A stretch of DNA of 62,990 bases, the filler included, from Reticulomyxa filosa (taxonomy: Eukaryota > Protista > Foraminifera): assembly GCA_000512085.1 (NCBI GenBank). It is 10 parts of 10 records of this genome, joined end to end, with 100 filler letters (N's around TTAATTAATTAA, not from the genome) between each part and the next. Parts side by side here need not be neighbours in the genome. Positions count along the whole stretch, not along the records: positions 23,934 to 37,679 come from ASPP01018224.1; 9 more parts are not named here. One strand, written 5' to 3'. A model generated the notes under the pieces. It made no database searches, was not told the origin of the DNA, and saw only the letters and a list, made by a program, of their open reading frames with translations. Within the stretch, counting starts at the first letter, position 1. Every line of letters starts with the position of its first letter. A program made the translations under genes and the position numbers. Below, in pieces: positions 23,739-38,183 of the stretch.

Positions 23739-23944
23739 CTTTATTACAGCAACAACAACCACAAAATAGTTTTTAATTATAAAATCTCTTTTTTTTTTTT
23801 TTAACTGTTATTGACATCTACTGATTGCACAATNNNNNNNNNNNNNNNNNNNNNNNNNNNNNNNNNNNNNNNNNNNNTTAATTAATTAANNNNNNNNNNN
23901 NNNNNNNNNNNNNNNNNNNNNNNNNNNNNNNNNAAAAAAAAAAG

Positions 23945-25174
23945 GAAAACGACTCGGAACCTGAATGTGTGGATGGAACTTGCTTGTTTGCATGCAATCA
24001 AATGAACCGAAAAGTGTTTGAATGGCTAACAGAGACAGGCACAGAAACAGATGCGGAAACACAAAGCCAGTCAGTATCGAAAGTCAATGACACAAATAAA
24101 CGCAGACCTTCGAATGAATACAACGTGTGTGATATACCCATGGTACTTGTGTGGCGCTCTCCTGTACTGTCTTCTACGCGTTTTATTATTCGCTTGACCA
24201 AAGAGAAAATTCATTGGAATTGGAAAACTACCAAACAGTTTTCTTTAACTGTTTATTTACTCTTTTTTTTTTTTTTTTTTTGTTTGCTTTGATTAGGAGA
24301 AACAAAATTGAAAGAAGAAAAACAAAAAAGAGGGAGGCGTGTCCATTATAAACAAAGGTACTTGATGCAACAATTAAAAATAAACGCTGCTTGCGCTGAT
24401 ATTATGTTGGATCGCTTATCTTGGAATCGTGAGCAAAGTGAGCACATTTTCGAATTACAATTATTCGAAACAAGTATAACACATTTTCGGTACGTGCATC
24501 TCAAGTTTTCCACTTGGTGTGATCTACGCCAGAAAAGCTCTCCATTTATCGATTATCCCAGACTTGTGAGAATCGACTGGAAGGGTGATGCGACTGAGGT
24601 ATACCATATCTTGCGTGACGTTGTTGCAGACACCGTTTTTGGGATTTGTGTACCTCTTCACTCTCTGATGAGAGAATACTTAGTTGATACTGACCGATTG
24701 TCTATTAGATTTTTGGTAGGTTTTTTCTTCGCCTCTTCCTTCCTCCCCTCCTCTCTTGTCTAACATATCTTTTGGCTGTCTCCATATGCTCGTGCATTGT
24801 GTTGTGTGATAATTAATGCGACGTGAAATAATGGAAACGCATACCAGTTAACTTTGAACAAAATCATTTGAATACACACATACACATGTAAAATCTTTAT
24901 TTTTTTGTAAAATTTGTAAAAAAAACAAAATTTAGAGTCTTCCAATGATAGCAAATCGATCCATTTGAAGCATCAGCCTTGGGAATGGAAACAGTTGGGC
25001 GTGGACTTGATCAAACAAATGCAATCAGAAAAAACTCAAATTAAGAAAAATTTTAATTCGCCTTGGGCAACGCTCTGCGTTTTGTTTGATGAAACAATGT
25101 TGGAAATTTATAGAAAAGCGATCACAGAGAAAGACAAGTTCCTTGGTACAAACAACATTATATTCACTCCGTAA
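23945..25174 (+). CDS. Hypothetical protein, 3' part (at least 3 exons, 5' truncated)
   Basis: ORFs 23969-24292, 24308-24763 and 24965-25174 can be linked by GT-AG introns, for example 24716-24937 in phase 0. No family was recognised. Confidence 0.5.
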
Positions 25175-25533
25175 TCTCATCTTCTCTTTTCATATATGTG
25201 TCAAGAATATTGCAAAACTTGAATAATATTTGATTAAATTTCGATTGTTTATTATTTGCTTCAAAATTTGGTTTTTCTCTTCGTTTAAAATTGTAAACAA
25301 AGTCAAATACAGTGAATGAATTACAACATCCGCCAACGAAAAGTGTTTGAATAATTTTAATGAATTTTAAATTCGGGTACATTGACCAAAGAAATCGTGT
25401 TTTTTTGCCAAACCCACATAAAAACAAACAAACAAAACACAACAGTATACATTGAGAATAGCAATATATACCAATTGGTCGAGCCTTTTTTTTCAACAAA
25501 TCAAAAGAAAAACAAAATGAAATTTCCACATCG

Positions 25534-28500
25534 CTAATTTTTTCCAAATATAAGTTTTGAGACCGTCACTACTGCTGTCAAAAAGACAGCAATGATTGTC
25601 CGCACAAGTAAAACGCTCAAATCCCCATCATAAAATCGAGGAATAATATCTTTTCTTATGACAATTTCCTTGACATTGTCGATGAAGTCGAGATGTGCTT
25701 CTTCCAACAAATGTCTTTCTTCAATGACGGTTTTCTTTCGTTGTCGAAGACCCCAATCATTGGGTGACTCTTTCTCTGTTCCAGCACTCGCAATTTTTTG
25801 AACGTCATCGTTTTCAATTACGGTTACATGTTTCTCTTTGTTTTTCTTTTCGTGATCCGATTCTTCTAGATTTTCATCATCCAGATCAGGGAGGGTGCTA
25901 ACACTTGGAATGTTAACAACAGTCTGGTTTTTTTTCTCATCTTCGTCTCCGGCCGGTTGCGAGGCATCACCTGGATTTACTTCTGCCAATGGAACATTTA
26001 GATTATTGGAAGGAGCTAATATGAAAAATTTTTGTTTGATTGATTTCATGGATAATCGACATTTCAAATAAAAACGCTGCTCAGCGATAAATCTTTCTTG
26101 AATTTTTTGAATACTTTGAACATCTTGCGCACCAAACCAGATACGTATTAGGCACACCAAAAATAGGAGCCATAAAAACCCAATGCCATTCCACAAAATA
26201 CTTTGATACGCAATACCAGAAATAAAATAAACACGATAAAACATAAATGCACTCAAAAATAGTGAAATAGTGACCAACCACAATGTTGGTAATTCTTGTT
26301 TGCTGAATAACAAGCTACCTGTTCAAATCACGTACATACAACAATACATGCATACACAAAAAAAAAAACAATATGTTGTGAAGCCACTCAAAAAAGATAA
26401 GCACAGGAAAAAATAAACGAGACTTTACTCACCATCAACTGCCAAGAATGTTCGCATTTCCAACCATCCAAGTGCATTGGAATAACGCTTGAAAGATAAA
26501 AACAGGTTGCTAAATTGAGCACGGATGTTCCTTCTTCGTGTTAACAAAAATGTCAAATCGCCCACGTAACTCTTAAAAGTATTGAAATTGAGAACATATT
26601 GCGCTTCAATGGTTCGTAGCAATATTTGCACCAAGCAAAAGTTTGAAATGATGGCAGAAACGCATATTGCCACATGATTCGAGTAAATGAATGAATATCC
26701 TAATATCACACGAGTAATTCCTGGCAGCAGTGCATACAAAGCGCTTGTCAATGCAATTACAAATGTGACCTCTCCTATGTAGAGATACAACAAACAAGAA
26801 TGGCAAACATTTAAAAATTTAAACATGTAACAAAAAAAAAGGGGGGGAAAAAAAAAGGGAAAAAAAAAAAAAAAAAAGGTAACCCAACTTGGAATACGTT
26901 TTTGCGCTGATTTAGCCCTTTCGTAAGCATACAGATATTCCCCAGCAGAGCATTTATACTCAAAAATGTTCGCCAAAGTATAACTCGATTTCACCCAATT
27001 TTTGCCACGACGCCAATGGAGGATCAACGACGACATCATAGCTAATCCATACGCTAAACAACACCCAAAAAACCACGTATAAACAAAACGGTCCGGCGGT
27101 TTCAATTACGGACACATTGGAATCATAATAAACTACAACGGATGCATAATATAAATGAAAAAGTACCAATCCAAACAAGCCACTGGCGACAACAAACAAA
27201 ATAAATCGTTGCACCAGTTGCGCTTTCGACTGACTCAAAAACCAACGATAATTTCGAGCCGCTTCGTGCTGTTTTTCCTTTTCATCCGAGTTTTCTGCTG
27301 CACGACCAACCACCAACCCGAGCAAATCATATGATATTGCTTCAGGACGAGTATAATCCAAATCACGTGGGAATTTTATCAATAACTGTTCATAATTTCT
27401 TTTATCGTTATATTTGGTTTTGTTTGCATACACAATTTATTCCGTATCATATACATATTCATATATGTGCATATATACATATATGTATATACATATATGT
27501 ATATAAATATATATATATATATTTTTTTTTTTTAAATACGTGTAAAGTACAAAATATAACAACAATATGCATATGTAACTTTTCAGGCGAAAAAGTCAAA
27601 AATGCAACTACTTGCCACAGCAATCGCAGAGGCAAAATGCACCCATAAAGTAAGGATTTAACCAAGACATCCCTGCGAAATCGGCGAATGATGGTGTATT
27701 CTTTCAAAGACAATATCGGTAGTGAGATCTTATCAGGAGGAACATTTTTTTCCGAAATTTGGGTTAATCGCAACCGCTTTTGGAAATCCAATTGTCTGTC
27801 GTCCTCCACACTTTCTCCTATCAAATTGTGTTGAAAACATTCCACAAGTTGGTTCCACGCTCGTGTCGTTGCTGCCGCTGCCGCTGCTGGCTTCTCCTCA
27901 ACTGCGCTCGGTCGACTCCCTTCCAATGCCAGGAGTTTGTTTTGAGATTCGATCAAGCTTTTGAAGCACTCTTTCACTTGTTCTTTGTTCGACGCTGTCA
28001 ATTCGACATATTCGAAGTGATTTTTTTCCACAAATTCCATAACGATTAATTTTTGGTTTTTCTATCAAAAAAAATTAATAAATAAAATAAGGACGGCATA
28101 CAAAAAAAAACACTTATTACAATTAAGAAAAACGCAACATAAGTGCAAAAGGTGTACGTATGCAGGTTTACAAAAAAAAAGTTCAAATGAACCTCTGCAC
28201 AGAGAGTTATTTGTGTTTCAGTTTTTTCTTTTTTTTTTTTTTTTTTGAATTTTTTGTATGTGTGAAGATTGACCAAAAAAAAAAAATTAAAAAAAAATGA
28301 ACTTTTAAAACGTGTAGTTAATAGGCAAAGGGGAAAGGGGGAAAAAAAAAAAAACCTAAGGGGGGGGGGGAGGAGCGGATAAAGTATACTCAACATAGTC
28401 AGGCGGTGCAAATTCGTCAATCCTGTTGGCGGCAATAACAATTGGAAGAGAAGAAATATTTCCATTGGTAGACTTTTGCAGCTTGCTGATGTAATGTTCA

Positions 28501-28975
28501 ACACAACGCCATGAATTTTCAAAAAAATCTCCATATGCCATCACCAACAAAAAAGCATCACGAGTACGTATCCATGAATCTTGCAATGATGCAAATTCTT
28601 CTTGTCCCGCAGTATCCAAAATGTCCAGCAACAACCTTTGCTCTCCAATTGGAAAAATTTTCCGATAAGAATCTTAAAAAGGTTATGGCGGGTTCGCAAC
28701 CCATATTTGTGTTGTTTGTTTGTCGTGTGTATGTATTAAAAGGGAAACTGTCGGGCTTCATGCCTTTTTGTTTTGGTTTGTTTTTTGACTCTTTTTGATT
28801 GTTCACCTTCAATTGTGGCGTCGTGAGACTCTTGAAAAACCCCGTGCACAAACTGGGTGACTATCGAAGTTTTCCCAACTTTTGAAGTTCCAAAAACACC
28901 AACATAGAAGTCAGGTTCAGTCTCTCGGCCTTGAGTTGATTGTGAGAATGAGCGATTTGTTGCGTGTTCAGCCAT
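25534..28975 (-). CDS. Ras-family small GTPase fused to a PHTF-like multi-pass (7TM) membrane domain, 6 exons, about 850 aa
   Basis: Exons 28975-28807, 28672-28395, 28061-27580, 27398-about 26884, about 26770-26431 and 26318-25534 have compatible phases. Ras motifs GTSKVGKTS, ATIEDSYRK, LLDILDTAGQEEF, NRID and ELTAS. The C-terminus has 7-8 hydrophobic segments. One +1 frame break lies near 26960-27005. Confidence 0.8.
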
Positions 28976-30586
28976 TCTTTCAAAAAGGAGTAGCCTCCGA
29001 GATCAAATAAACAATACTACTTTCAACTTCGTTTTCCCAAGTTCAGTCGTTCACAAAAGTTCAACACCTTGTTCTCCCAGTTAAAAACTCTTGGAAAGAA
29101 CACAGCCCAAAAATACAATATCAATTATTTTTTTACCTATTGTCACGGCTTTCTAAAAGGTTTTTTGTGCAAAAAGATCAGATGAAAAATTATATGTTAT
29201 TGTGGATACGAATTAATCAAAGCTAAATCAAAAAACGTACTGTCTTTGACTCTTTCTAACTTAAATCTTTTATCTTTTTTATAAAACACATGCAACTTCC
29301 AATTTTTACATCCAAACATTTAATTATCTTTTTTTCTAGTCAAGTTTGCTAACCTTATCCAAAAGGACATAGTACGCACAAAACATATTAATTGATATAA
29401 CGACTTACAACAAAGAAAATTATTGATTATGTTGTAATATTTGTTGTTTTGACTGGAATGTTTTTGAAATTATTTATCAATGTTTCCAATCTGTTTGAAA
29501 TAGTTGACAATTTCTTGAGCAGTAAGCTGTTTACGTCGTGTAAATATCATGACTTCTACTGTTTTATCACAACACTAGCAACAAGTTGAATTTGACATTT
29601 GACCATTTTTGATATTTTTGCACTTTATTCAATGTATGTTTCATTTTTGCAATCACTTTTGCCATATTTTTTCATTTCGGTTCCAGTTAAGTATATTCTA
29701 AGACATTTTCATGAAGTTCATAACTTATATTTCTTTGAAAAAATGAAACGAAAAGCTAATTGTGATATTTATTCCAATTTGATCTTTTAAATGTATTTTG
29801 TATATATTTTTGTGTTACTTTCATAAAACCAATTATAATATGATATGTTTGTAATCTATTACATCATTTATATCTTTCGCAGTTTCTTCTGTCGACTTAG
29901 TGTAATATTGGTCAATGCAAAATAGATTTAAATCAAATACAAAAATACTATTGCTGTAACTGTTTCAGTATCGTATTTCTTTCGTTTTCGTTTTGCTGTA
30001 GCTGTCCATTTTCAAATTTTTTTACACATTTTTGGAAATATTTGCAAGTATTGTTACATCTGAATTGCACTAACAAAGAACCAGCTGTTTTACTTTCTAT
30101 TGCAATTTAGATAGAATTTTTTTAATTTAATTATCACAATGTGCACAAGTACATTTATACAATTTTTTTCTATTATAGTAATAATTTGGTTGATCTAATT
30201 TACTTTGATTTATGTACAATTATTTGATGATAGCTACATTTTCTAAAAGAAATAATTGATTCCAATAAAATAAAAATTCACTATTAAAAAATTACCATTT
30301 TGTGAAGGCAATTGATTTTATTAAAATAAACATTTCAGCTAACTTTTTTAAAAATACATATTTAAAATGATCTGGTTTATATTTATGAAAAGCAAGCTCT
30401 TAGATAAATTCAATAGAATGTGTGCTCCAAACGCGATTGAAAAACGACTGACGTAGTTTTTACTTGTACTAAAAAACTAACAACTGAACTTACCCGGCAG
30501 GTTTTTCCAATTCAAAAATTGCCACGTAAAGAATCTAAAAAAACTTATACATATTTTTACTAATAGTTATTATATTAAAAAATACG

Positions 30587-30831
30587 ATGAAAGCGTTCAA
30601 GGCAGCAACACAAAACAAGCCCACAGAATCTCAATACTTTGCAAAACTCGGAAAAGACGCCGCGGTCTTTGCTGGGCTTGTGGTTTTCACCTATCTTGTT
30701 CCTGTCGTTCTCGAACAAATTGGGTATTTACCTTTTTTTTCTTTGCTTTGACTTGAAATTTCTTGACAATTTTGTGGCCAAAAATAAAATTAATTAGCTC
30801 GAAGCCTTCGAAAGGATCTCAAAAGAAATAA
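30587..30831 (+). CDS. 56-aa single-TM microprotein, Tom5-like, 2 exons
   Basis: ATG at 30587, phase-2 intron 30724-30797, TAA at 30829-30831. Product MKAFKAATQNKPTESQYFAKLGKDAAVFAGLVVFTYLVPVVLEQIGSKPSKGSQKK. Confidence 0.65.
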
Positions 30832-31518
30832 GTTAGATATTGAAACGTGATACGGCTTTGCTGATGTTCACATGCACAAAGATTCGATTTGGAAAAAGAG
30901 ATAATTCCTGAACGTCACACTCAAAAAAATATCTGTTGTTCAATGCTAGTGTCTCGACTTTGCAAAAATTCTAATAAATTTTGTTTAACTTGTTTTTTTA
31001 ATCAACTTTTGAAATGAAAATCTGGCATCTTGGAAAATTTTTTTGTGAAAGATTTTTTTTGGAGAAAAATTTGGAATAACAATTGGTTACCCTGGGCAAC
31101 ATATTTCCGTCATGTCAAACTTCCAATTCAAACAAAGACCAATTTTGGGTCGAGAAAAAAAAAGCCACAACAACAAGGAAAGACGACACAAAACAAAATA
31201 AACAAATCGAGAAAGATCGCAAAACAGTTATAAACACTTTGGTCTCTCTCTTGCTTTTCGTATTCAATAAATTTTAAAATTTGTTTTGTTTTGTTTTGTT
31301 AGTGTGTCAGGTACTTTGGATTCCTCAAAGCACCTGATCGCTCTTGTTTTTTTTTATTTTTTTTATTTTCACGCCCTCACCCCTATTTCCCTTCCCGTTC
31401 CGTCCAAAAAAAAAAAAAAAAACAAAAACCTCACACAATGAATATTATTTGGTACTTTTTACAGTATTGATTCCAACAAACCCTTTGCAAACGGGTCGCA
31501 TATTATTCTGCAAACCCG

Positions 31519-32575
31519 TTAATGCCACATTTCATTTTGTACTTCCGTTATCTCGCTATCCACAGTTTTCATTGCTTGTTTCATTGCAATCATAGTTTCT
31601 TGAGTTGATTTTAAACCTTTTCACCAACAAACATTCAATAACAAAATTTTTTTCCTCCCATGAAACAAGATACAACTCTAATTACATTTTTTAAAAAAGG
31701 GGCGGATTGGTATAATATTGATATACAAAAAAAAGGGACCATTAAAAAAGTCCGAAAGGGGGTGTATGGTGCGTGTAGGGGGGGGGGGGGGAACAACGTA
31801 TACTAAACTTTTAAGAAGAACTTTTTCAGCATCACCAGCGCATCCGCAATTGCAAAGCATTTCGGCATTTTCCATAGTACGTTTAATTTGAGACTCAATT
31901 TCCAGGATCTGACGTAATTGCTCGTCTAAAATCCTTTCTTTTTGCTCGAATTTGTCATCAATAGTTTGCATGAGCTCATTTTCACATTCTTTGATTTCTT
32001 GAAAATGTGCCACGGAATCACTTTCAGTATCAGTATCAGTATCAGTGTCTGGTGTCTCAGTCAATTTAATTGCGACCATGTTTGTCTTCGTTTGCTCTAA
32101 GGCAATTGTTAAACGTCTTTTGTCTGACAATTCCGAACCTTTGAACACCGCATTCAAACTTCTTTTTAATTCGTCTGTGTTCATTTTTGTCAATATGTCC
32201 AATGACGTTATTCCTTTTTTTCTCATTCTCTCTGCGTACATGTCACAACGTAATGTCTTCAACCATTCCACTAATTCTTCAAACTTTTTAGTTTCTGTGG
32301 CCCCTTTTTCCAAAGTTGTATAAAAAAAAAAGAAAACTCCAAAATTTAGCTTGGAATACTAGTGTCCCATATGATACAAAGAAAATGAATTTTTCTTCTC
32401 CCTTTGCAAAGAAGGGGGAAAAAAAGGCTTGTGGTTATTTCATGTTTTCGTGTTGTGGTTGTTTGCGGTCATTACCAGCTAAGATAGCTTTCCCAACAAT
32501 TTTGGGTGAAAGGTTTTTTGGAGATATCCAATACTGCTCTTCCAATTTCTGGTTTTTTTTTAATTTATTTGCCAT
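31519..32575 (-). CDS. SAM-domain and coiled-coil protein, about 3 exons (3' end uncertain)
   Basis: LVEWLKTLRCDMYAERMRKKGITSLDILTKMNTDEL...DKRRLTIAL fits the SAM consensus. A phase-1 intron links exon 1 (MANKLKKNQK...ILA). Confidence 0.65.
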
Positions 32576-33376
32576 CTTGTTTAGCAAAGGAAAGTTCAAA
32601 ACCGAAATTTGGGAGCGAAAAACAAAATAAAAAAAAACTAAAACAAAACCAGGCGTTCCTTAAACTAAATGGACAGTGATATATAGAAATGTGTTGTCAA
32701 TTAAATGAAAATAAATTTGTGCGTGCAGTTTTGTTATAACTTTTTGTTCACAGAATCGGCAAACGTTAATGAAGATAGTGTCAAAACAGCTCTTTTTTAA
32801 AATTTATAATGTTTAAAATATTTTTTGTTTACGTGAACTTTTCTCAAGCTAGCTTCGTGCTTGATGGAATGTAGTAAGGAAAAAAAAAGAAGATAAATCT
32901 TTACATAGAAGATGTGGAATGAAAGAAAACAGGACAAGAAATCGAGTGTCCCCCCCTTATGTTAACATTGACCTCGTCACACAGTGCGTGGTTGAAATAA
33001 AGGTTGGGAGCACTTCAACAACAAAGTTAGGAATTATATCACACAAAAAGGACACAAGCCATTTTTCCTTACCAAAAAAAAAATCTTTCTTAAAAGTTGT
33101 ATCAGGCATGATACAATAACGTCGAACAATTATTTCAATTGAGTAGTGAGCATATCATAAACGCTTACCAACACGTTTTTTTCATGCGCTTCATACGACC
33201 TTCAGGAGATGTTTCATTATAATTTACTGGAGCAAACGAGCTGAGACAAAATAGCATAAATATTTTCGCAAAAAAAAAAAAAAAAATTGCGAGATACACC
33301 AAATAATAGAAAAATGCTCCCCTTTAAAAATAAAAGTTATTGAGCCTACGGGAAAGCTTGTCTTTCCAAAATTTTG

Positions 33377-34364
33377 TCACAACACAGAGAGGCGGTAAAT
33401 CGACGTACCTTTTTTATTGGCACCGTTTACCTTTGCCTTGTTCTTGTTTGTATGATTGCATTGCAAACAATAGCCAAGTAATTTGTCAACTGTCTCGGCA
33501 TTAATATGACAGACCTCTATTTCAATGTCATCAACTTCATTCTCAGATGAACACAGTGCTATTGGACATTTTCTATGGATCATTTCCACCACTTTGCCCA
33601 ACTGATCGCTGTTTAATTCAGTTACTAATTTCGCAAACTTCAATCGTTTTTCGTGTACACTCTCTTGGCAACTCATTTTATCTGCTTGCTTCCTTTGTTA
33701 ATTTAAAAAAAAAAAAAAATACATAGCAGCGCATTTTTTTTTTTGTTTTGTGCGAACAAAAAACCCCGATTGTATACGTTGCAAAAAACAAAAAACCATC
33801 TCTTTAACATTTTGAATATTCCTTTTTTTTTTTTGAAATTTGGATAAAAAAAATCCAATACCAAAAAAAATCAATATTATGTGTACCTTTTTTTCCGCAA
33901 TCATTTCTTTAAGTCGGGCAAACTTTTTTTTCGAAAATCTTGGCAAAATTCTGTGCAGCATGCATTTTTTTAAAAAAATACTGACAATGTAAGAAAAAAA
34001 AAAAGCAGGGTGTGTCATGTCAAGGTCAAAATTTGATACTGATTTTTTTTTTGTTTATTGCTCTTTCGATAACTTCTGCCACCATGTAAATGTTGCTCCC
34101 AGGAATATTGTAGCGTTTGGCATTTTTCCATACCAATCTTACATCCTCTGCAAATTCGTCTGCACTATCGTATTCCCCTCCACTTAGTTTTTTACCAATT
34201 GTCGCCAAGTCCATCGGATGTTTGATTATTTGAGGATAGTCAGGCAGATTCAGTGCTTTCCAGTCCACCGGATTTTCAAAAGGTTCAACTCCGGGTTTGG
34301 TCTTCAGTTCTTTCAAAATTTCGGCACATTGTGCTAATTCTTCACTTTGGATGCTATCATACAT
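33377..34364 (-). CDS. Bromodomain + ET (NET) domain protein, BET/GTE-like
   Basis: The bromodomain reads PFENPVDWKALNLPDYPQIIKHPMDLATI...DVRLVWKNAKRYN, with the conserved Asn. The ET region reads EKRLKFAKLVTELNSDQLGKVVEMI...DIEIEV. A small middle exon encodes NFAKIFEKKFARL. Confidence 0.92.
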
Positions 34365-35171
34365 GTTTGATATTTGATCTTAAGTTACTAAATGAAAGAT
34401 TTTTGGAAATTGAAAAGATCAAAAAAAAAAAGGAAGGTATACAAGTCGCTCTTGCCTACGTTTTGATTTTCAGAAAGAATTGATGCAGACAAAAACATTT
34501 AATTTGAACTTGAAAATCAAAAGGTAAAAAATTAGTAACTTTTTTAAAAAGTTTCCAGCGACGCTTTTAATATGTTTTATGGTTCTAAAAGTCGAAGTAC
34601 ATTGAATACAAGTTTGTTGACAACAAATTGCTTGTTGAATGCAAAAATAAGGATTCACATATGTTGTCCTTATCAACAAAACATTCAGTTTTGGTTCTGG
34701 TGGGATTCAAAAGACTAAATCCAAGCAATGGCGTAACACTTCCTTTACTCTACAAAAATAAAGAGCCTTTTAAGTTGTGAACAAAAAAGAGTTAAACAAT
34801 TTTTCAGTGTAATGTCCAATCAATAGAAAATTACCTTGCATCATTAATACCAAATTTATTAAATATCGTTATTTAAAAAGCGTGAATTTTCAAACAACAC
34901 GCAAAGAAAAAATGCTCAGCTGCAGCAGTGAAGGGGTTCAATATAATTTGTAAAAAATTCTGTAATATGCCCATTGCACAGCTTCTTTGTTTATAGAAAA
35001 TATTTGAACATTAACTCGTCAAAAACTCCACATAGTGTGCGAATCACAATTGATAATTTTGATATAATAACAAACTAAAAAAAAAAAAAGAGGTTTGTTG
35101 TCGTTTAAATTCTGTTGTGACTATCTTTCGAGGAGAAAGCCCTAACATTATATTCCATTGCATAGTCTTCA

Positions 35172-37384
35172 ATGTCTTCACCGACAACCGATGATGATAC
35201 GAAATCAGTTCCGCCCTCAGCCGGCATCATTATTGCCGCGGCGACTAGTTCAAAAAGTTACAAATCCGAAGACATATCAAAGCACTACAGTCCAGAATCG
35301 CTCATGATTAAAGGTGGGTTTTGTTAAAAAGTACGATATCTGTACGCATGCATATGCATATTGATAACAACAAACATGGACGAACAAGATTTACACTTGT
35401 ATTTCAAAGCAAAAAAATGGGGGGGGGGGAGGAAAAGAGAGGAAAAGGAAGAAGAAGAAGAAGAAGAAGAAGAAAAAAAAAAAAAAAGCACGATACAACA
35501 TGTTTTGAAAAAAAAAAAAAAAAAAAAAAGTGATTAAATTACACACTATTGGTTGTTAGAGTCGTCCTGTCGCCAGCAACAATGTAAGACCTCTTTGCTT
35601 CGATACTCCAAGACATCCGTGCTATGTATCTATGCAAACTTATGTTGGATTTGTATGGCATTAGCTACACTCTCATTCCGCTATGAGCAACTAGTTCAGT
35701 TGTTTTTTTTTTGTCATTATAACATATGCATATCTCGTTACGTTATGTATTTTGCTTATCAAATATTACAAATTATACACATTACATATGCATATATGTA
35801 CATATACAATATATATGTATATATATATATATACATATATCTAAACGACTTGCAATACAATCGAATCTTTGTTGTTACAATAGGTGACACAACAAGAATT
35901 TCCACCGTACAGTGAATTGAACGAATGCAAATTGACCGGCTATAATCAAAATACGCCGTGGGGCAAATCTTGTACGGTCAACTATTCCATCAACTATGAC
36001 TTTGACACCCCCATTTATTTTATTACAAATTGACCAACTTTTTTCAAGTGTGTATATATTTGGTTCATTTTTTTTTCTTTCTAAAAATACAACCACGCAT
36101 ACATACATACATACATGTATATATGTATATATGTGTATATATATATTATTTTTATTTTTATTTTTTTGCTGATATTGACAGAATCATCGAGTATATGTGC
36201 GATCGCGATCGGATTATCAGTTGAGTGGACAGCATCCATCGGAAGTGTCTACATGCGACTTGTGGTCAAGATACAATGGCAGCAAACTCCTGCCGTGTGG
36301 ACTTATTGCTGCTTCCTTTTTCAATGGTTTGTGTATGTATGATTACAATGCTCTCATTATGCGCGTAGTGTCCTCTTTCCTATGTGTATATGTGTGTTGT
36401 ACATTAACACACACGTGTGTGCATGATAACAATATAACTCTGTCAATTGCCATAACGAACACTGTGTTATTGTTATGTTTGTTTGTTTTTATTCATTTTA
36501 TTTGTATCGTTTATGGTGATGATGATGATGATGATGATGATGGGGGGGGAAACGGGACGGAAATTAATATTTGCTAAGATAAATATAATGTGACGCACAT
36601 TGACGGACGAACGGGACGACATACGCAGTTGTGTCCATATACGGCAGGATCGTGCACGGGAGACGAGCAAAAGAGTGAATGGACCAACGCCTCGTGGCAC
36701 CACAATGGGACGTGGGAAAACAGCAATATCCCCTGGTCTTCGGATAAACGCCACAAGTTCCGTCCAACGAAGCTGAAGTCGGGATTGACCAACCGTGCCG
36801 AGTTGCAACAGTGGCAACAAGTGACGTTACCAAACACGAGTGACGTGGATTTGATGGTGTGGATGAGGGTCGCTGCGAGTTCCACCTTTACCAAACTCTA
36901 TCGCATCAATCGTCAATTGAAGTTCAAAAAAGGGGACCGTCTTTTGGTTAGTTTTTTTTTTTTTTTTATATAAATAAATTATAAGAAAATTGATAAGTTT
37001 GTTTGAATGTATGCCATGGGGTGGGGGGTGGAAAAAAAAAAAGGTTCATATAAAAAATTATTTTGATGTGTCTCAATTTGATGGGACAAAATCATTGGTG
37101 ATATCGACGACCAACTTTATTGGCGGAAGAAATTTCGCATTGGGAATTGGGTTTTTTACGACTGGCATTGTCTTTGCTGTCATGTTTGTAATTTTCCTTA
37201 TTTTTGCTCCGCGAGACAGGTCTACACTTTATTCTCTCTTCTTTTTCTTTTTCTTCAAAAAATAATAATATATGCATCCCCCTTTTGTTGAATTTGAAAA
37301 AGAATAGGAATCAAACCCTATATACGACCAGAAATGCAGCTTAGCTACAACATGGCAGATGAAAGATTCACCAAAGAAAGGTGA
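35172..37384 (+). CDS. CDC50/LEM3 family P4-ATPase (flippase) beta subunit, multi-exon
   Basis: Motifs PIYFYYKLTNFFQ|NHRVYVRSRSDYQLSG, PCGLIAASFFN, IPWSSD, LMVWMRVAASSTFTKLY and FDGTKSLVISTTNFIGGRNFALG, with two TMs. The last exon is uncertain. Confidence 0.92.
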
Positions 37385-38183
37385 ATAATACTTGAGTTTG
37401 AGGGGCAGAAGAGATATATATATATAAATAAAATTTTTATTTATCTTTGTTGTCTAAATATATTCTTCTGTTTCTGTCCGGAAATAATCAATCTTATTAT
37501 TTTTTTTTGGCTTCTTTGTTTGCTTTTTTTCTCCTGCACTGTTTGTTTTCTGAAAGTTGATCATGGCTTGTTCTTTTTTGATTGCTCTTGTTTGGGACTT
37601 TTGCCCTCCCCCTTTTTCGAGTGAAACATATTCTTGGAAATTGCTTATGTAGAAATGTACCAATCTTTTTGTTTTGTGTNNNNNNNNNNNNNNNNNNNNN
37701 NNNNNNNNNNNNNNNNNNNNNNNTTAATTAATTAANNNNNNNNNNNNNNNNNNNNNNNNNNNNNNNNNNNNNNNNNNNNACTGACGCTGACAGGCTGTCA
37801 GGCCACGTCAGCAGTAGAAACAGCAGGTTAAGCATGTAATTGAATAAAGCGCTAGTATGTTATGCAAATCTCTCAGCTTCTTTAATGTATAAGAGAAAAG
37901 CTTCTCATGCAACAAGCATGAAGGGGGGAAGTTCGTAAAAGCTACAAAACTGTGTTTATATGTGGAAGCATAAATTGTAATATTTGAACTTAAACAATTT
38001 TAAAAATAAATAAATAAAAAGTTTAGTAATTTGGGAAATAAAAATTGAAAAATCGGGTTTTTTTTATTTAGTGAATCAAATAAACACAGTGGAACGGATC
38101 ATGAGGACGAAAAAAAGTTTTTTTGTTGTAATCAATGATTTTTTAAAGTGCAGACTTGAATAGCTGAGCCAATAACAAAAAAA

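What the first reader, a model, noticed from the sequence alone, without database searches (positions are those of the whole stretch)
25534..28975. Ras GTPase fused to a PHTF-like 7TM domain: candidate GTPase-coupled chemoreceptor-type ion channel
Seen: five ORF-track fragments splice into one gene with compatible phases. A complete Ras G-domain with no CAAX runs through a linker into one N-terminal hydrophobic segment plus seven TMs. The C-terminal half (LLTRRRNIRAQFSNLFLSFKRYSNALGWLEMRTFL; FIAEQRFYLK; PRFYDGDLSVLLVRTIIAVFLTAVVTV) aligns by eye with my recollection of PHTF1/2 ([69 protein letters not shown]). Established: PHTF proteins have been reported as structural homologues of insect odorant/gustatory receptors. 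These are tetrameric 7TM ion channels with a cytosolic N-terminus, short outer loops and long inner loops, and the loop lengths here fit that topology. Inference: the Ras domain would be cytosolic and could gate the channel or be switched by it, making a one-chain sensor-switch. I know of no described Ras-7TM ion-channel fusion.
Basis: partly seen in the sequence, partly recalled or inferred. Interest (0 to 1): 0.82.

Follow-up and report, generated by a model that had tools for sequence, protein, structure and literature searches.

The report
Ras switch fused to chemoreceptor-fold channel domain
This foraminiferan gene joins a Ras-type GTP switch to a seven-helix membrane domain that folds like insect smell and taste receptor channels, an undescribed combination conserved across foraminifera, though this copy carries a one-base frame break.

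Summary
On the minus strand, 28975-25534, six GT-AG exons encode about 854 aa. The protein has an N-terminal Ras G domain without CAAX, a linker, one short hydrophobic hairpin (TM0) and seven TM helices, ending 3 aa after TM7.

The window is a contig of Reticulomyxa filosa (Foraminifera). The public annotation splits the gene in two.

The fusion is real. Every full-length relative found (759-1026 aa) carries Ras plus the same membrane domain. Those with a named source come from Nonionella, Bolivina, Elphidium, Ammonia and an R. filosa paralogue. Several are complete ORFs on single transcripts.

No specifically PHTF-like affinity was shown. No sequence link exists, and IL1 is only about 50 aa.

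Caveat: an extra T in a T5 run (26966-26962) breaks the frame inside the conserved IL1. This is either an assembly error or a pseudogene. Channel activity and GTPase coupling are inference only.

The parts
28807..28975 (-). Exon 1: ATG at 28975-28973, 21-aa leader, P-loop GTSKVGKT, switch I HDATIE
   Evidence: Pfam Ras profile 4-32, E 1.9e-05. Donor G|GTGAAC. The junction gives TIE|DSYRK, as in Ras and the homologues.
28673..28806 (-). Intron 1, 134 nt, GT..AG, phase 1
28395..28672 (-). Exon 2: end of switch I, G3 DTAGQEE, G4 variant NRID
   Evidence: Pfam Ras profile 37-115, E 4.7e-12. Best solved relatives are K-Ras, H-Ras and M-Ras, E 1e-11 to 1e-13.
28062..28394 (-).
   Evidence: colinear with homologues
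27580..28061 (-). Exon 3: G5 (ELTASNK), end of the G domain, poorly conserved linker, conserved PILSLKEY..RRF motif, and the TM0 hairpin (LLYGCILPLRLLWQVVAFL)
   Evidence: Pfam Ras profile 129-159. tblastn to P0013, P0015 and P0010 over the motif and TM0. In the model of P0013, TM0 is two short helices broken at the conserved LP.
27399..27579 (-). It holds an AT-rich simple repeat.
   Evidence: the junction is colinear with homologues
26884..27398 (-). Exon 4: cytosolic pre-TM1 segment (LLGLVVGR..WFLSQS), TM1, EL1, TM2, IL1. The exon may end at 26889 instead.
   Evidence: tblastn E 1e-13 to 1e-18 to four homologues in one frame up to 26963. The remainder is colinear in the next frame.
26962..26966 (-). 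Frame break: a T5 run inside exon 4. One T too many relative to the family-conserved frame creates the TGA at 26962-26960, where the public gene model ends.
   Evidence: With X at the break, the alignment to 9 homologues needs no other gap there.
26770..26883 (-). Intron 4, 114 nt (GTTACC..GAGAG). The alternative 26775-26888 (GTTGGG..CATAG) has the same length and changes two residues (SW versus RE). It holds poly-T/C tracts.
   Evidence: The choice between the two is not resolved.
26433..26769 (-). Exon 5: TM3, EL2, long TM4, IL2 with the conserved LFLSFKRYSNALGWLEMRTFLAVDG
   Evidence: Part of the deposited product P0001.
26319..26432 (-). Intron 5, 114 nt, GTGAGT..AACAG, phase 1
   Evidence: The junction AVDG|SLLFSKQELP matches the homologues (..EGKILFGEQELP). 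The deposited model P0001 has AVDGDKQELP.
25534..26318 (-). Exon 6: long TM5, EL3, long TM6, about 120 aa of acidic and largely disordered IL3, TM7a, TM7b, a 3-aa tail and the stop codon at 25536-25534
   Evidence: HMMER of this exon found 33 relatives, E down to 1e-54 excluding self. AF2 of P0001:17-388 gave pLDDT 77.5, with TM7 as two helices (300-333 and 345-369) separated by a short break.

Best explanation
Window 28975-25534 (minus strand) is one six-exon gene of the foraminiferan Reticulomyxa filosa. It encodes an approximately 854-aa membrane protein.

What is there (shown):
- The N-terminus is a Ras-subfamily G domain. The P-loop, the switch I threonine, DTAGQ, an NRID variant of NKxD and a TAS variant of SAK are all present. 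There is no CAAX.
- A poorly conserved linker leads to a conserved beta motif (PILSLKxF) and a helical hairpin (TM0).
- Then come seven transmembrane helices with the fold of the insect odorant/gustatory-receptor superfamily of seven-TM ion channels (7TMIC).
- The gene belongs to a multi-copy family seen so far only in Foraminifera. Every full-length member has the same Ras + 7TM architecture, so the fusion is old and kept by selection.
- This copy has one extra T in a T5 run that breaks the frame in the first intracellular loop.

What is inferred:
- I take the extra T for an assembly error rather than a dead gene. That is not shown.
- Topology: the N-terminus and Ras domain are cytosolic and TM0 does not cross the membrane.
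- Mechanism (about 0.3): the membrane domain assembles like other 7TMICs through its cytosolic TM4-TM7a 'anchor' and forms a ligand-responsive channel or receptor. The tethered Ras domain sits under it. Either its GTP/GDP state sets the activity of the membrane domain, or conformational change in the membrane domain exposes or hides the Ras effector loop. Either way, reception and Ras signalling would lie in one chain.
For: Gene and fusion:
- GT-AG introns with matching phases.
- Colinear Pfam Ras matches on exons 1-3.
- K/H/M-Ras are the closest solved proteins.
- Exon 6 alone finds 33 relatives among 1.84 billion representatives. All six hits of 775-874 aa carry PF00071 at the N-terminus.
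- A second search adds four more Ras-bearing members and two partial ones.
- Named sources are Nonionella stella, Bolivina argentea, Elphidium margaritaceum, Ammonia sp. and R. filosa. They include MMETSP transcripts called 'type:complete'.
- The break-marked model aligns end to end with 9 homologues at 28-30% identity.

Fold:
- AF2 of P0013:240-851 with 31 sequences: pLDDT 79.6, pTM 0.77.
- TM4, TM5 and TM6 helices are 42, 49 and 47 residues. TM7 is split into 563-574 and 586-609.
- Foldseek's first ten rows are all OR/GR/Orco.
- The window's own product P0001 gives GR/OR at ranks 1-7, in register with TM3-TM7.

Topology:
- The three predicted outer loops have 0 K+R. The inner loops have 6, 6 and 19.

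Conservation:
- It peaks at TM5, the TM7a-7b link, TM2 and the N-terminal beta motif. This partly recalls the reported 7TMIC pattern of a conserved anchor and TM5-TM6.

From memory, not a tool result:
- All OR/GR structures were released after AlphaFold2's training cut-off. Release dates are shown.
Against: - No sequence-level link to any 7TMIC family: Pfam on exons and on 31 members, and an alignment profile against PDB sequences.
- The full-domain fold evidence comes from a 30%-identical homologue, not the window protein.
- The frame break may be real, making this copy a pseudogene.
- Its G domain also departs from the family consensus. It has Ser/Lys at Ras positions 12/13, H-D-A for Y-D-P in switch I, NRID, and no Cys cluster.
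- Oligomerisation was not supported. The two-copy run gave 'no answer', and the tool did not use the supplied alignment.
- Nothing tests ion conduction, ligand binding, GTP binding or coupling.
Confidence: 0.68

Rival explanations
1. The architecture is as described, but the membrane domain is not a channel. It would be a polytopic anchor or scaffold that replaces the lipid anchor of Ras and fixes a Ras-like switch at a particular membrane. The protein would act simply as a membrane-resident Ras. Its resemblance to OR/GR would reflect shared ancestry or shape without ion conduction.
For: - There is no CAAX, so the protein needs another membrane anchor.
- Most relatives keep a Cys cluster just after the G domain, like the acylated tail of Ras.
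- The Ras effector loop (YDPTIED[ST]Y) is strongly conserved in the family, which suggests ordinary Ras effectors and regulators.
- Ion-channel function has been demonstrated only for insect OR/GR members of the 7TMIC superfamily (established knowledge; the papers read treat the others as candidates).
- The oligomer test gave no answer.
Against: - A mere anchor would not need about 600 conserved residues.
- Conservation is highest in TM5, TM2, TM6 and the TM7a-7b link. These are regions that form the anchor and conduits in ORs.
- All five 7TMIC hallmarks are kept, including the split TM7.
Confidence: 0.3
2. This particular copy is a pseudogene. The extra T at 26966-26962 is real, and translation stops after TM2 (..LYFGEHF*). 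The downstream TM3-TM7 exons would be a decaying remnant of one of several R. filosa paralogues.
For: - The frame break sits in conserved coding sequence.
- The G domain deviates from the family consensus at the P-loop, switch I, G4 and G5, and lacks the Cys cluster.
- R. filosa has at least three other loci of the family: RFI_18052, RFI_32418 and RFI_20654.
Against: - It is the only defect in about 854 codons.
- All five introns keep GT-AG and phase. All downstream exons are open and keep the family motifs.
- The break lies in a homopolymer, the classic site of assembly error.
- An in-frame splice that skips it also exists (26994-26775).
Confidence: 0.25
3. There are two separate genes, as in the public annotation. 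One would be a 560-aa Ras protein with three hydrophobic segments (28975-26960). The other would be an independent 388-aa membrane protein (26826-25534).
For: The deposited annotation calls two genes here. The stop at 26962-26960 and an ATG at 26826 make this formally possible.
Against: - Ten or more homologues, several from single transcripts, run straight through this point in one ORF.
- The first 17 residues of the 388-aa model are translated poly-pyrimidine intron and match nothing.
- The split would cut a 7-helix fold between TM2 and TM3.
Confidence: 0.04

Closest known systems
Insect odorant and gustatory receptors and Orco (7TMIC superfamily, Class A; PDB 8z9z, 8jm9, 8vc1, 7lic, 8v02, 8v3d, 8jme, 6c70)
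   Same: - Seven TM helices with a cytosolic N-terminus and a near-absent extracellular C-terminal tail.
- An N-terminal hairpin (TM0).
- Short outer and long inner loops.
- Long TM4-TM6 reaching into the cytosol, and a split TM7.
   Different: - No detectable sequence similarity; 5-9% identity in the structural alignments.
- No 7tm_6 or 7tm_7 Pfam hit.
- An N-terminal extension of about 280 aa carries a Ras G domain.
- A folded beta element is built from the N-terminal motif and IL1.
- IL3 is very long and acidic.
- Ion conduction and tetramer formation are untested.
PHTF1/PHTF2 and other Class-B ('PHTF-like') eukaryotic 7TMICs
   Same: Candidate members of the same structural superfamily. 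They are found in unicellular eukaryotes as well as animals, have long cytosolic insertions, and have no known function.
   Different: - PHTF-like proteins are defined by a long loop between TM2 and TM3. Here IL1 is about 50 aa and the long loop is TM6-TM7.
- No PHTF family among the Pfam hits.
- No Reticulomyxa or foraminiferal entry in the supplementary files of the PHTF paper.
- PHTFs have no G domain.
GrlHz (holozoan GR-like proteins), the subset with an N-terminal WD40 propeller
   Same: A precedent for a 7TMIC carrying a sizeable cytosolic protein domain on its N-terminus (Benton and Himmel 2023, PMC9998090).
   Different: The added domain there is a protein-interaction propeller, not a nucleotide switch. 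The taxon is different, and no sequence relation was found.
H-Ras/K-Ras/M-Ras (Ras subfamily, Pfam PF00071)
   Same: The G domain has G1-G5 in order. The effector loop is nearly identical to Ras in the family (YDPTIEDSY). The catalytic Gln of DTAGQE is kept.
   Different: - No CAAX or free C-terminus; the domain is the N-terminal module of a polytopic protein.
- This copy has Ser and Lys at the positions of Ras Gly12/Gly13, NRID for NKxD and TAS for SAK.
FeoB (prokaryotic Fe2+ transporter with an N-terminal small-GTPase-like G domain): an analogy for how it may work, not a relative
   Same: One chain with a cytosolic N-terminal G domain fused to a polytopic membrane domain. In FeoB the nucleotide state is thought to control passage through the membrane part (established knowledge, not tested here).
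   Different: The G-domain family and membrane fold are unrelated, and FeoB is bacterial. No similarity was found in any search here.

Membership tests
Ras family small GTPase (Pfam PF00071) | Profile match above the curated cut-off, colinear over the whole G domain | tested here: met
   Exon 1 scores 24.7 bits and exon 2 scores 46.2 bits against a cut-off of 21.6. Exon 3 scores 12.7 bits for profile 129-159. Profile positions are 4-32, 37-115 and 129-159 in order. Full-length relatives score 83-165 bits.
Ras family small GTPase (Pfam PF00071) | Nucleotide-binding motifs G1 GxxxxGK[ST], G2 Thr, G3 DxxGQ, G4 NKxD, G5 SAK | tested here: met
   G1 is GTSKVGKT. The switch I Thr is kept in HDATIED. 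G3 is DTAGQEE. G4 is NRID (K to R). G5 is TAS. All are present, but G4 and G5 are variant, and Ras positions 12/13 are Ser/Lys. Activity is not tested.
Ras family small GTPase (Pfam PF00071) | C-terminal CAAX box or lipid anchor | tested here: not met
   The G domain is followed by about 650 more residues, and the protein ends ..LIFGKN. Relatives keep a Cys cluster after the G domain, but this copy has a single Cys. The G domain is Ras-like. The protein as a whole is not a classical lipid-anchored Ras.
7TMIC superfamily (OR/GR/GRL/DUF3537/PHTF); criteria of Himmel et al. 2023 | Seven transmembrane helices (TM0 not counted) | tested here: met
   Hydropathy peaks. Helices in the AF2 models.
7TMIC superfamily | Extracellular loops shorter than intracellular loops | tested here: met
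   EL1, EL2 and EL3 are 7, 9 and 8 aa. IL1, IL2 and IL3 are 51, 21 and about 120 aa in the window protein.
7TMIC superfamily | Intracellular N-terminus, extracellular C-terminus | tested here: inconclusive
   The positive-inside count agrees: 0 K+R in the three short loops against 6, 6 and 19 in the long ones. TM0 is modelled as a broken hairpin, not a spanning helix. No topology predictor or experiment was available.
7TMIC superfamily | Long TM4, TM5 and TM6 helices extending into the cytosol (anchor domain) | tested here: met
   P0013 model: 42, 49 and 47 residues. The window's own product: helices 33-79, 99-143 (kinked) and 152-212.
7TMIC superfamily | Split TM7 (TM7a and TM7b) | tested here: met
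   P0013 model: H563-574, an 11-residue break, then H586-609. Window product: H300-333, a break with short strands, then H345-369.
7TMIC superfamily | Shared sequence profile with other 7TMICs | tested here: not met
   No 7tm_6, 7tm_7, DUF3537 or PHTF hit at E up to 1 on the exons or on 31 members. The alignment profile against PDB sequences gave nothing. A profile search of 5.8 billion proteins returned only the family itself. Published 7TMIC clusters also often lack such links, so this does not exclude membership.
7TMIC superfamily | Homotetramer with a TM7b-lined pore; cation conduction | not testable with these tools
   A four-copy job exceeds the size limit. The two-copy job gave 'no answer', and the alignment was not used.
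PHTF-like (Class-B) 7TMIC | [quoted passage not shown] | tested here: not met
   IL1 is 51 aa here and 50 aa in P0013. It is folded and is not the longest loop. The definition is taken, and the paper gives no numeric threshold.
PHTF-like (Class-B) 7TMIC | Sequence or model similarity to PHTF1/2 | not testable with these tools
AlphaFold DB is not on hand and there is no solved PHTF structure.

The most novel reading that the evidence does not exclude
The foraminiferal Ras-7TMIC proteins would be self-contained ionotropic and metabotropic receptors. They would form a tetrameric ligand-gated channel of the insect chemoreceptor fold whose gating is set by, or which directly switches, its own covalently attached Ras domain. 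This would be the first direct physical link between the 7TMIC superfamily and small-GTPase signalling. By the Rosetta-stone logic, it would also hint that unfused 7TMICs such as PHTF, GRLs and DUF3537 work with Ras-like GTPases.
Probability: 0.2. Interest if true: 0.9.

Novelty: new variant of a known kind. Interest (0 to 1): 0.72.

Why it matters
Outside insects, the function of the ancient 7TMIC superfamily is unknown. This includes human PHTF1/2, plant DUF3537 and the protist GRLs. A conserved natural fusion to a Ras switch is a rare functional clue, because fused domains usually act in the same pathway.

The fusion yields a concrete, testable hypothesis: nucleotide-state control of a chemoreceptor-fold channel, or channel-state control of Ras.

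For the Ras field, it is an unusual way to put a Ras-subfamily G domain on a membrane without CAAX. For foraminiferal biology, it points to a lineage-specific, multi-copy receptor family. That family could bear on sensing or on the control of the reticulopodial network.

On the practical side, the public R. filosa annotation of this locus is wrong. One gene is split in two, one splice junction is misplaced, and there is a probable homopolymer error.

Tried and rejected
1. RNA evidence. One run search found only three runs holding 5-6% of the sampled words. Those places were sent to no database search afterwards. One local script did use the whole minus-strand region, including them, as the subject of a local tblastn.
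3. The protein-atlas search on exon 6 gave no usable hit. The fold search in the ESM Atlas gave only TM scores of 0.28 or less, or short matches.
4. Sequence routes to a known membrane family all failed. These were Pfam on exons, Pfam on 31 members, an alignment profile against PDB sequences and a profile search of the 5.8-billion set (which returned only the family).
5. Complex prediction with two copies of P0026:318-775 gave 'no answer': score 0.00, the alignment was not used and the fold was uncertain. This is no evidence either way.
6. My first in-frame model used an intron at 26994-26775 and gave 819 aa. I set it aside as the main model because homology continues through the supposed intron and the splice would delete 36 conserved IL1 residues. 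It remains possible as a rescue splice.
7. I looked for conserved intron positions in the paralogue RFI_18052. Its structure differs and it has no intron in IL1, so it does not settle intron 4.
8. The joined spliced protein was built only inside local scripts, for hydropathy and for alignment to homologues. Searches went exon by exon by reference. Folding used database proteins: P0013, and P0001, the window's own deposited C-terminal product.
Full report
**Where the window comes from**

The usable piece (23934-37679) is the whole 13,746-bp contig ASPP01018224.1 of assembly GCA_000512085.1. A paralogue from the same assembly is deposited as 'hypothetical protein RFI_18052 [Reticulomyxa filosa]'.

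The piece is about 35% G+C. Its other genes are ordinary eukaryotic ones: a SAM-domain ORF, a BET bromodomain gene and a CDC50 fragment.

**The gene**

Reading the minus strand gives six exons:

| Exon | Coordinates |
|---|---|
| 1 | 28975-28807 |
| 2 | 28672-28395 |
| 3 | 28061-27580 |
| 4 | 27398-26884 |
| 5 | 26769-26433 |
| 6 | 26318-25534 (stop included) |

- All five introns are GT..AG, 114-333 nt long, and the phases match.
They are supported by gap-free colinearity with homologues. No RNA evidence could be obtained.
- The run search found only marginal holders. I sent those places to no database search afterwards. One local script used the whole region as a local tblastn subject.

**One defect**

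- Homology to four relatives runs in the exon-4 frame right up to a TGA at 26962-26960 (..ELYFGEHF*).
- The next 26 conserved residues (EYKCSAGEYLYAYERAKSAQKRIPSW, compare DYQCDVYTFLRSYAFSRQSKRNRHFSW in the paralogue) lie in the neighbouring frame.
- The switch happens in a run of five T (26966-26962). With an X at that point, the 854-aa model aligns end to end with nine full-length homologues at 28-30% identity and needs no other gap there.
- The reference therefore has one T too many relative to the family frame. Because the break sits in a homopolymer and is the only defect in about 854 codons, I favour an assembly error. A real frameshift (pseudogene) is not excluded.
- An in-frame splice that skips the break (26994-26775, my first 819-aa model) would delete 36 conserved residues. 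I treat it as unlikely.
- Intron 4 itself has two equally good placements 5 nt apart (26883-26770 or 26888-26775). Both give the same protein length.
- The public annotation follows the break. It calls a 560-aa Ras protein (28975-26960) and a separate 388-aa protein (26826-25534, P0001).
- P0001's first 17 residues are translated intron. Its exon 5/6 junction (AVDGDKQELP) fits the family worse than mine (AVDG|SLLFSKQELP against ..EGKILFGEQELP).

**The G domain**

- Pfam Ras (PF00071) matches exons 1, 2 and 3 at profile positions 4-32, 37-115 and 129-159.
- The closest solved proteins to exon 2 are K-Ras, H-Ras and M-Ras (E 1e-11 to 3e-13).
- The motifs are all present: GTSKVGKT, HDATIED, DTAGQEE, NRID and TAS. 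There is no CAAX, since the domain is internal.
- This copy is the odd one in its family. It has Ser and Lys where Ras has Gly12/Gly13, H-D-A for Y-D-P, and it lacks the Cys cluster (CxCC-like) that most relatives carry about 20 residues after the G domain.

**The fusion is a conserved family**

- HMMER with exon 6 alone against 1.84 billion representatives found 33 proteins. The six hits of 775-874 aa all have an N-terminal Ras domain (83-165 bits) and the same membrane domain.
- Two further word-index searches, one with a relative's membrane region and one with a 31-sequence alignment, added more Ras-bearing members (759-1026 aa) and only this family.
- Named sources are Nonionella stella, Bolivina argentea, Elphidium margaritaceum, Ammonia sp. 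and R. filosa (at least four loci). The rest are environmental contigs of 1-10 kb.
- Several come from transcriptome assemblies with ORFs flagged complete, so in other foraminifera Ras and membrane domain are on one mRNA.
- No member from outside Foraminifera appeared. That is absence within these searches, not proof.

**The membrane domain**

Instead I folded two database proteins.

1. P0013:240-851 (Nonionella, 30% identical to the window protein), with a 31-row alignment that included the window's exon 4 and P0001.
   - pLDDT 79.6, pTM 0.77. The low-confidence stretches are confined to the TM4-TM5 and TM6-TM7 loops.
   - In order, the model shows: two beta strands over the conserved PILSLKNF..R.F motif; a helix-break-helix hairpin (TM0, broken at a conserved LP); TM1 and TM2; an IL1 of 50 residues with strands and a helix; TM3; TM4, TM5 and TM6 of 42, 49 and 47 residues; a long disordered acidic loop; then TM7 as a 12-residue helix, an 11-residue break and a 24-residue helix ending 3 residues before the C-terminus.
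   - Foldseek against 350,542 PDB chains: the first ten rows are OR, GR or Orco (E 0.03-0.3, probability up to 1.00, TM by target 0.31-0.44).
   - No GPCR, rhodopsin or transporter fold is among the top 50.
2. The window's own deposited C-terminal product (P0001:17-388, TM3-TM7).
   - pLDDT 77.5.

In the window protein:
- The three predicted outer loops are 7, 9 and 8 residues without a single Lys or Arg.
- The inner loops are 51, 21 and about 120 residues with 6, 6 and 19. This is the positive-inside pattern expected if the N-terminus, and hence the Ras domain, is cytosolic.
- Conservation is highest in TM5, the TM7a-7b link, the N-terminal beta motif and TM2.

From memory: all OR/GR structures were released after AlphaFold2's training cut-off (release dates), so the model is unlikely to be a recalled template.

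**What is not supported**

- No sequence method links the family to 7tm_6, 7tm_7, DUF3537 or PHTF.
I had no PHTF sequence or model to compare.
- The published mark of PHTF-like (Class-B) 7TMICs, a long TM2-TM3 loop, is not seen. The long loop here is TM6-TM7.
- The safe statement is therefore '7TMIC fold, class undetermined'.
- Tetramer formation, conduction, ligand binding, GTPase activity and any coupling are untested. The one complex job returned 'no answer' and did not use my alignment.

**How it most likely works (inference)**

- The G domain hangs from the cytosolic N-terminus on a 50-100-residue variable linker. In most relatives the linker begins with a Cys cluster that could be acylated, like the Ras tail.
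- The linker ends in a strongly conserved beta motif that the model places beside the IL1 strands, directly under TM0, TM1-TM3 and next to the anchor helices.
- The Ras effector loop is almost unchanged from Ras in the family.
- A plausible mechanism: the nucleotide state of the tethered Ras domain is read by this cytosolic beta element or anchor, controlling the membrane domain. The converse is also possible.
- I give this about 0.3.
- The main rival (0.3) is that the membrane domain only anchors and positions a Ras switch.

**Novelty**

- 7TMICs in protists are known, and thousands of new ones were reported in 2023. A 7TMIC subset with an N-terminal WD40 domain is known.
- No paper in the searchable library holds both '7TMIC' and 'GTPase', or 'foraminifera' with 'gustatory receptor-like'.
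- The two key papers mention no GTPase or fusion. The supplementary files held for them contain no Reticulomyxa or foraminiferal entry.
- One paralogue is already deposited as a single Ras+TM 'hypothetical protein', so the sequences are public but uninterpreted.
- I rate it a new variant of a known kind: a new domain architecture and a new, lineage-restricted family within the 7TMIC fold.

Noticed in passing
Family alignment A1, about 20 residues after the G domain (e.g. P0013 ~205-215, P0015 ~196-200); window 27850-27830: Most family members carry a Cys cluster just after the Ras domain: CLCC, CVCC, CHCIC, CTCTCC, CDCKCSC. It resembles a multi-acylation site or a relic of the Ras membrane-targeting tail. 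The window copy has only one Cys there (LVECFQ).
   Followed up: partly
window 28900-28870 (exon 1): The P-loop of this copy is GTSKVGKT, with Ser and Lys at the positions of Ras Gly12/Gly13. Relatives mostly have GAG[GAS]xGKS. Substitutions at position 12 in Ras impair GAP-stimulated hydrolysis, so this copy may be slow-cycling or degenerate.
   Followed up: partly
window 26826-25534 and 28975-26960 (public gene models; L001 5001-6293 and 2852-4867): The deposited annotation splits the gene into a 560-aa and a 388-aa product. The 388-aa model starts in intron 4 and uses an exon 5/6 junction that removes four conserved residues.
   Followed up: yes
L002 1501-4106 (paralogue RFI_18052, contig ASPP01013936.1): The deposited 775-aa model of the paralogue has a poly-F/poly-K stretch at about residues 200-312 that looks like translated intron. 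It lacks the conserved PILSLKNF motif and TM0. Its intron positions differ from this gene's, with no intron in IL1.
   Followed up: partly
   Followed up: no
window 31678-32313 (-), 33377-34364 (-), 36990-37265 (+): Neighbouring ORFs hit SAM_2 (E 7e-08), BET plus Bromodomain (E 2e-07 and 2e-25, a BET-type bromodomain gene in at least two exons) and CDC50 (E 1e-14, a fragment at the contig end). These are ordinary eukaryotic genes with no evident link to the finding.
   Followed up: partly
model m07cfd89a8cf4, residues 1-20 and 164-194 (P0013 241-259 and 403-433): AF2 predicts beta strands in the conserved N-terminal PILSLKNF motif and in IL1. This could form a small cytosolic sheet absent from insect OR/GR, and it is a candidate docking surface for the Ras domain.
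   Followed up: no
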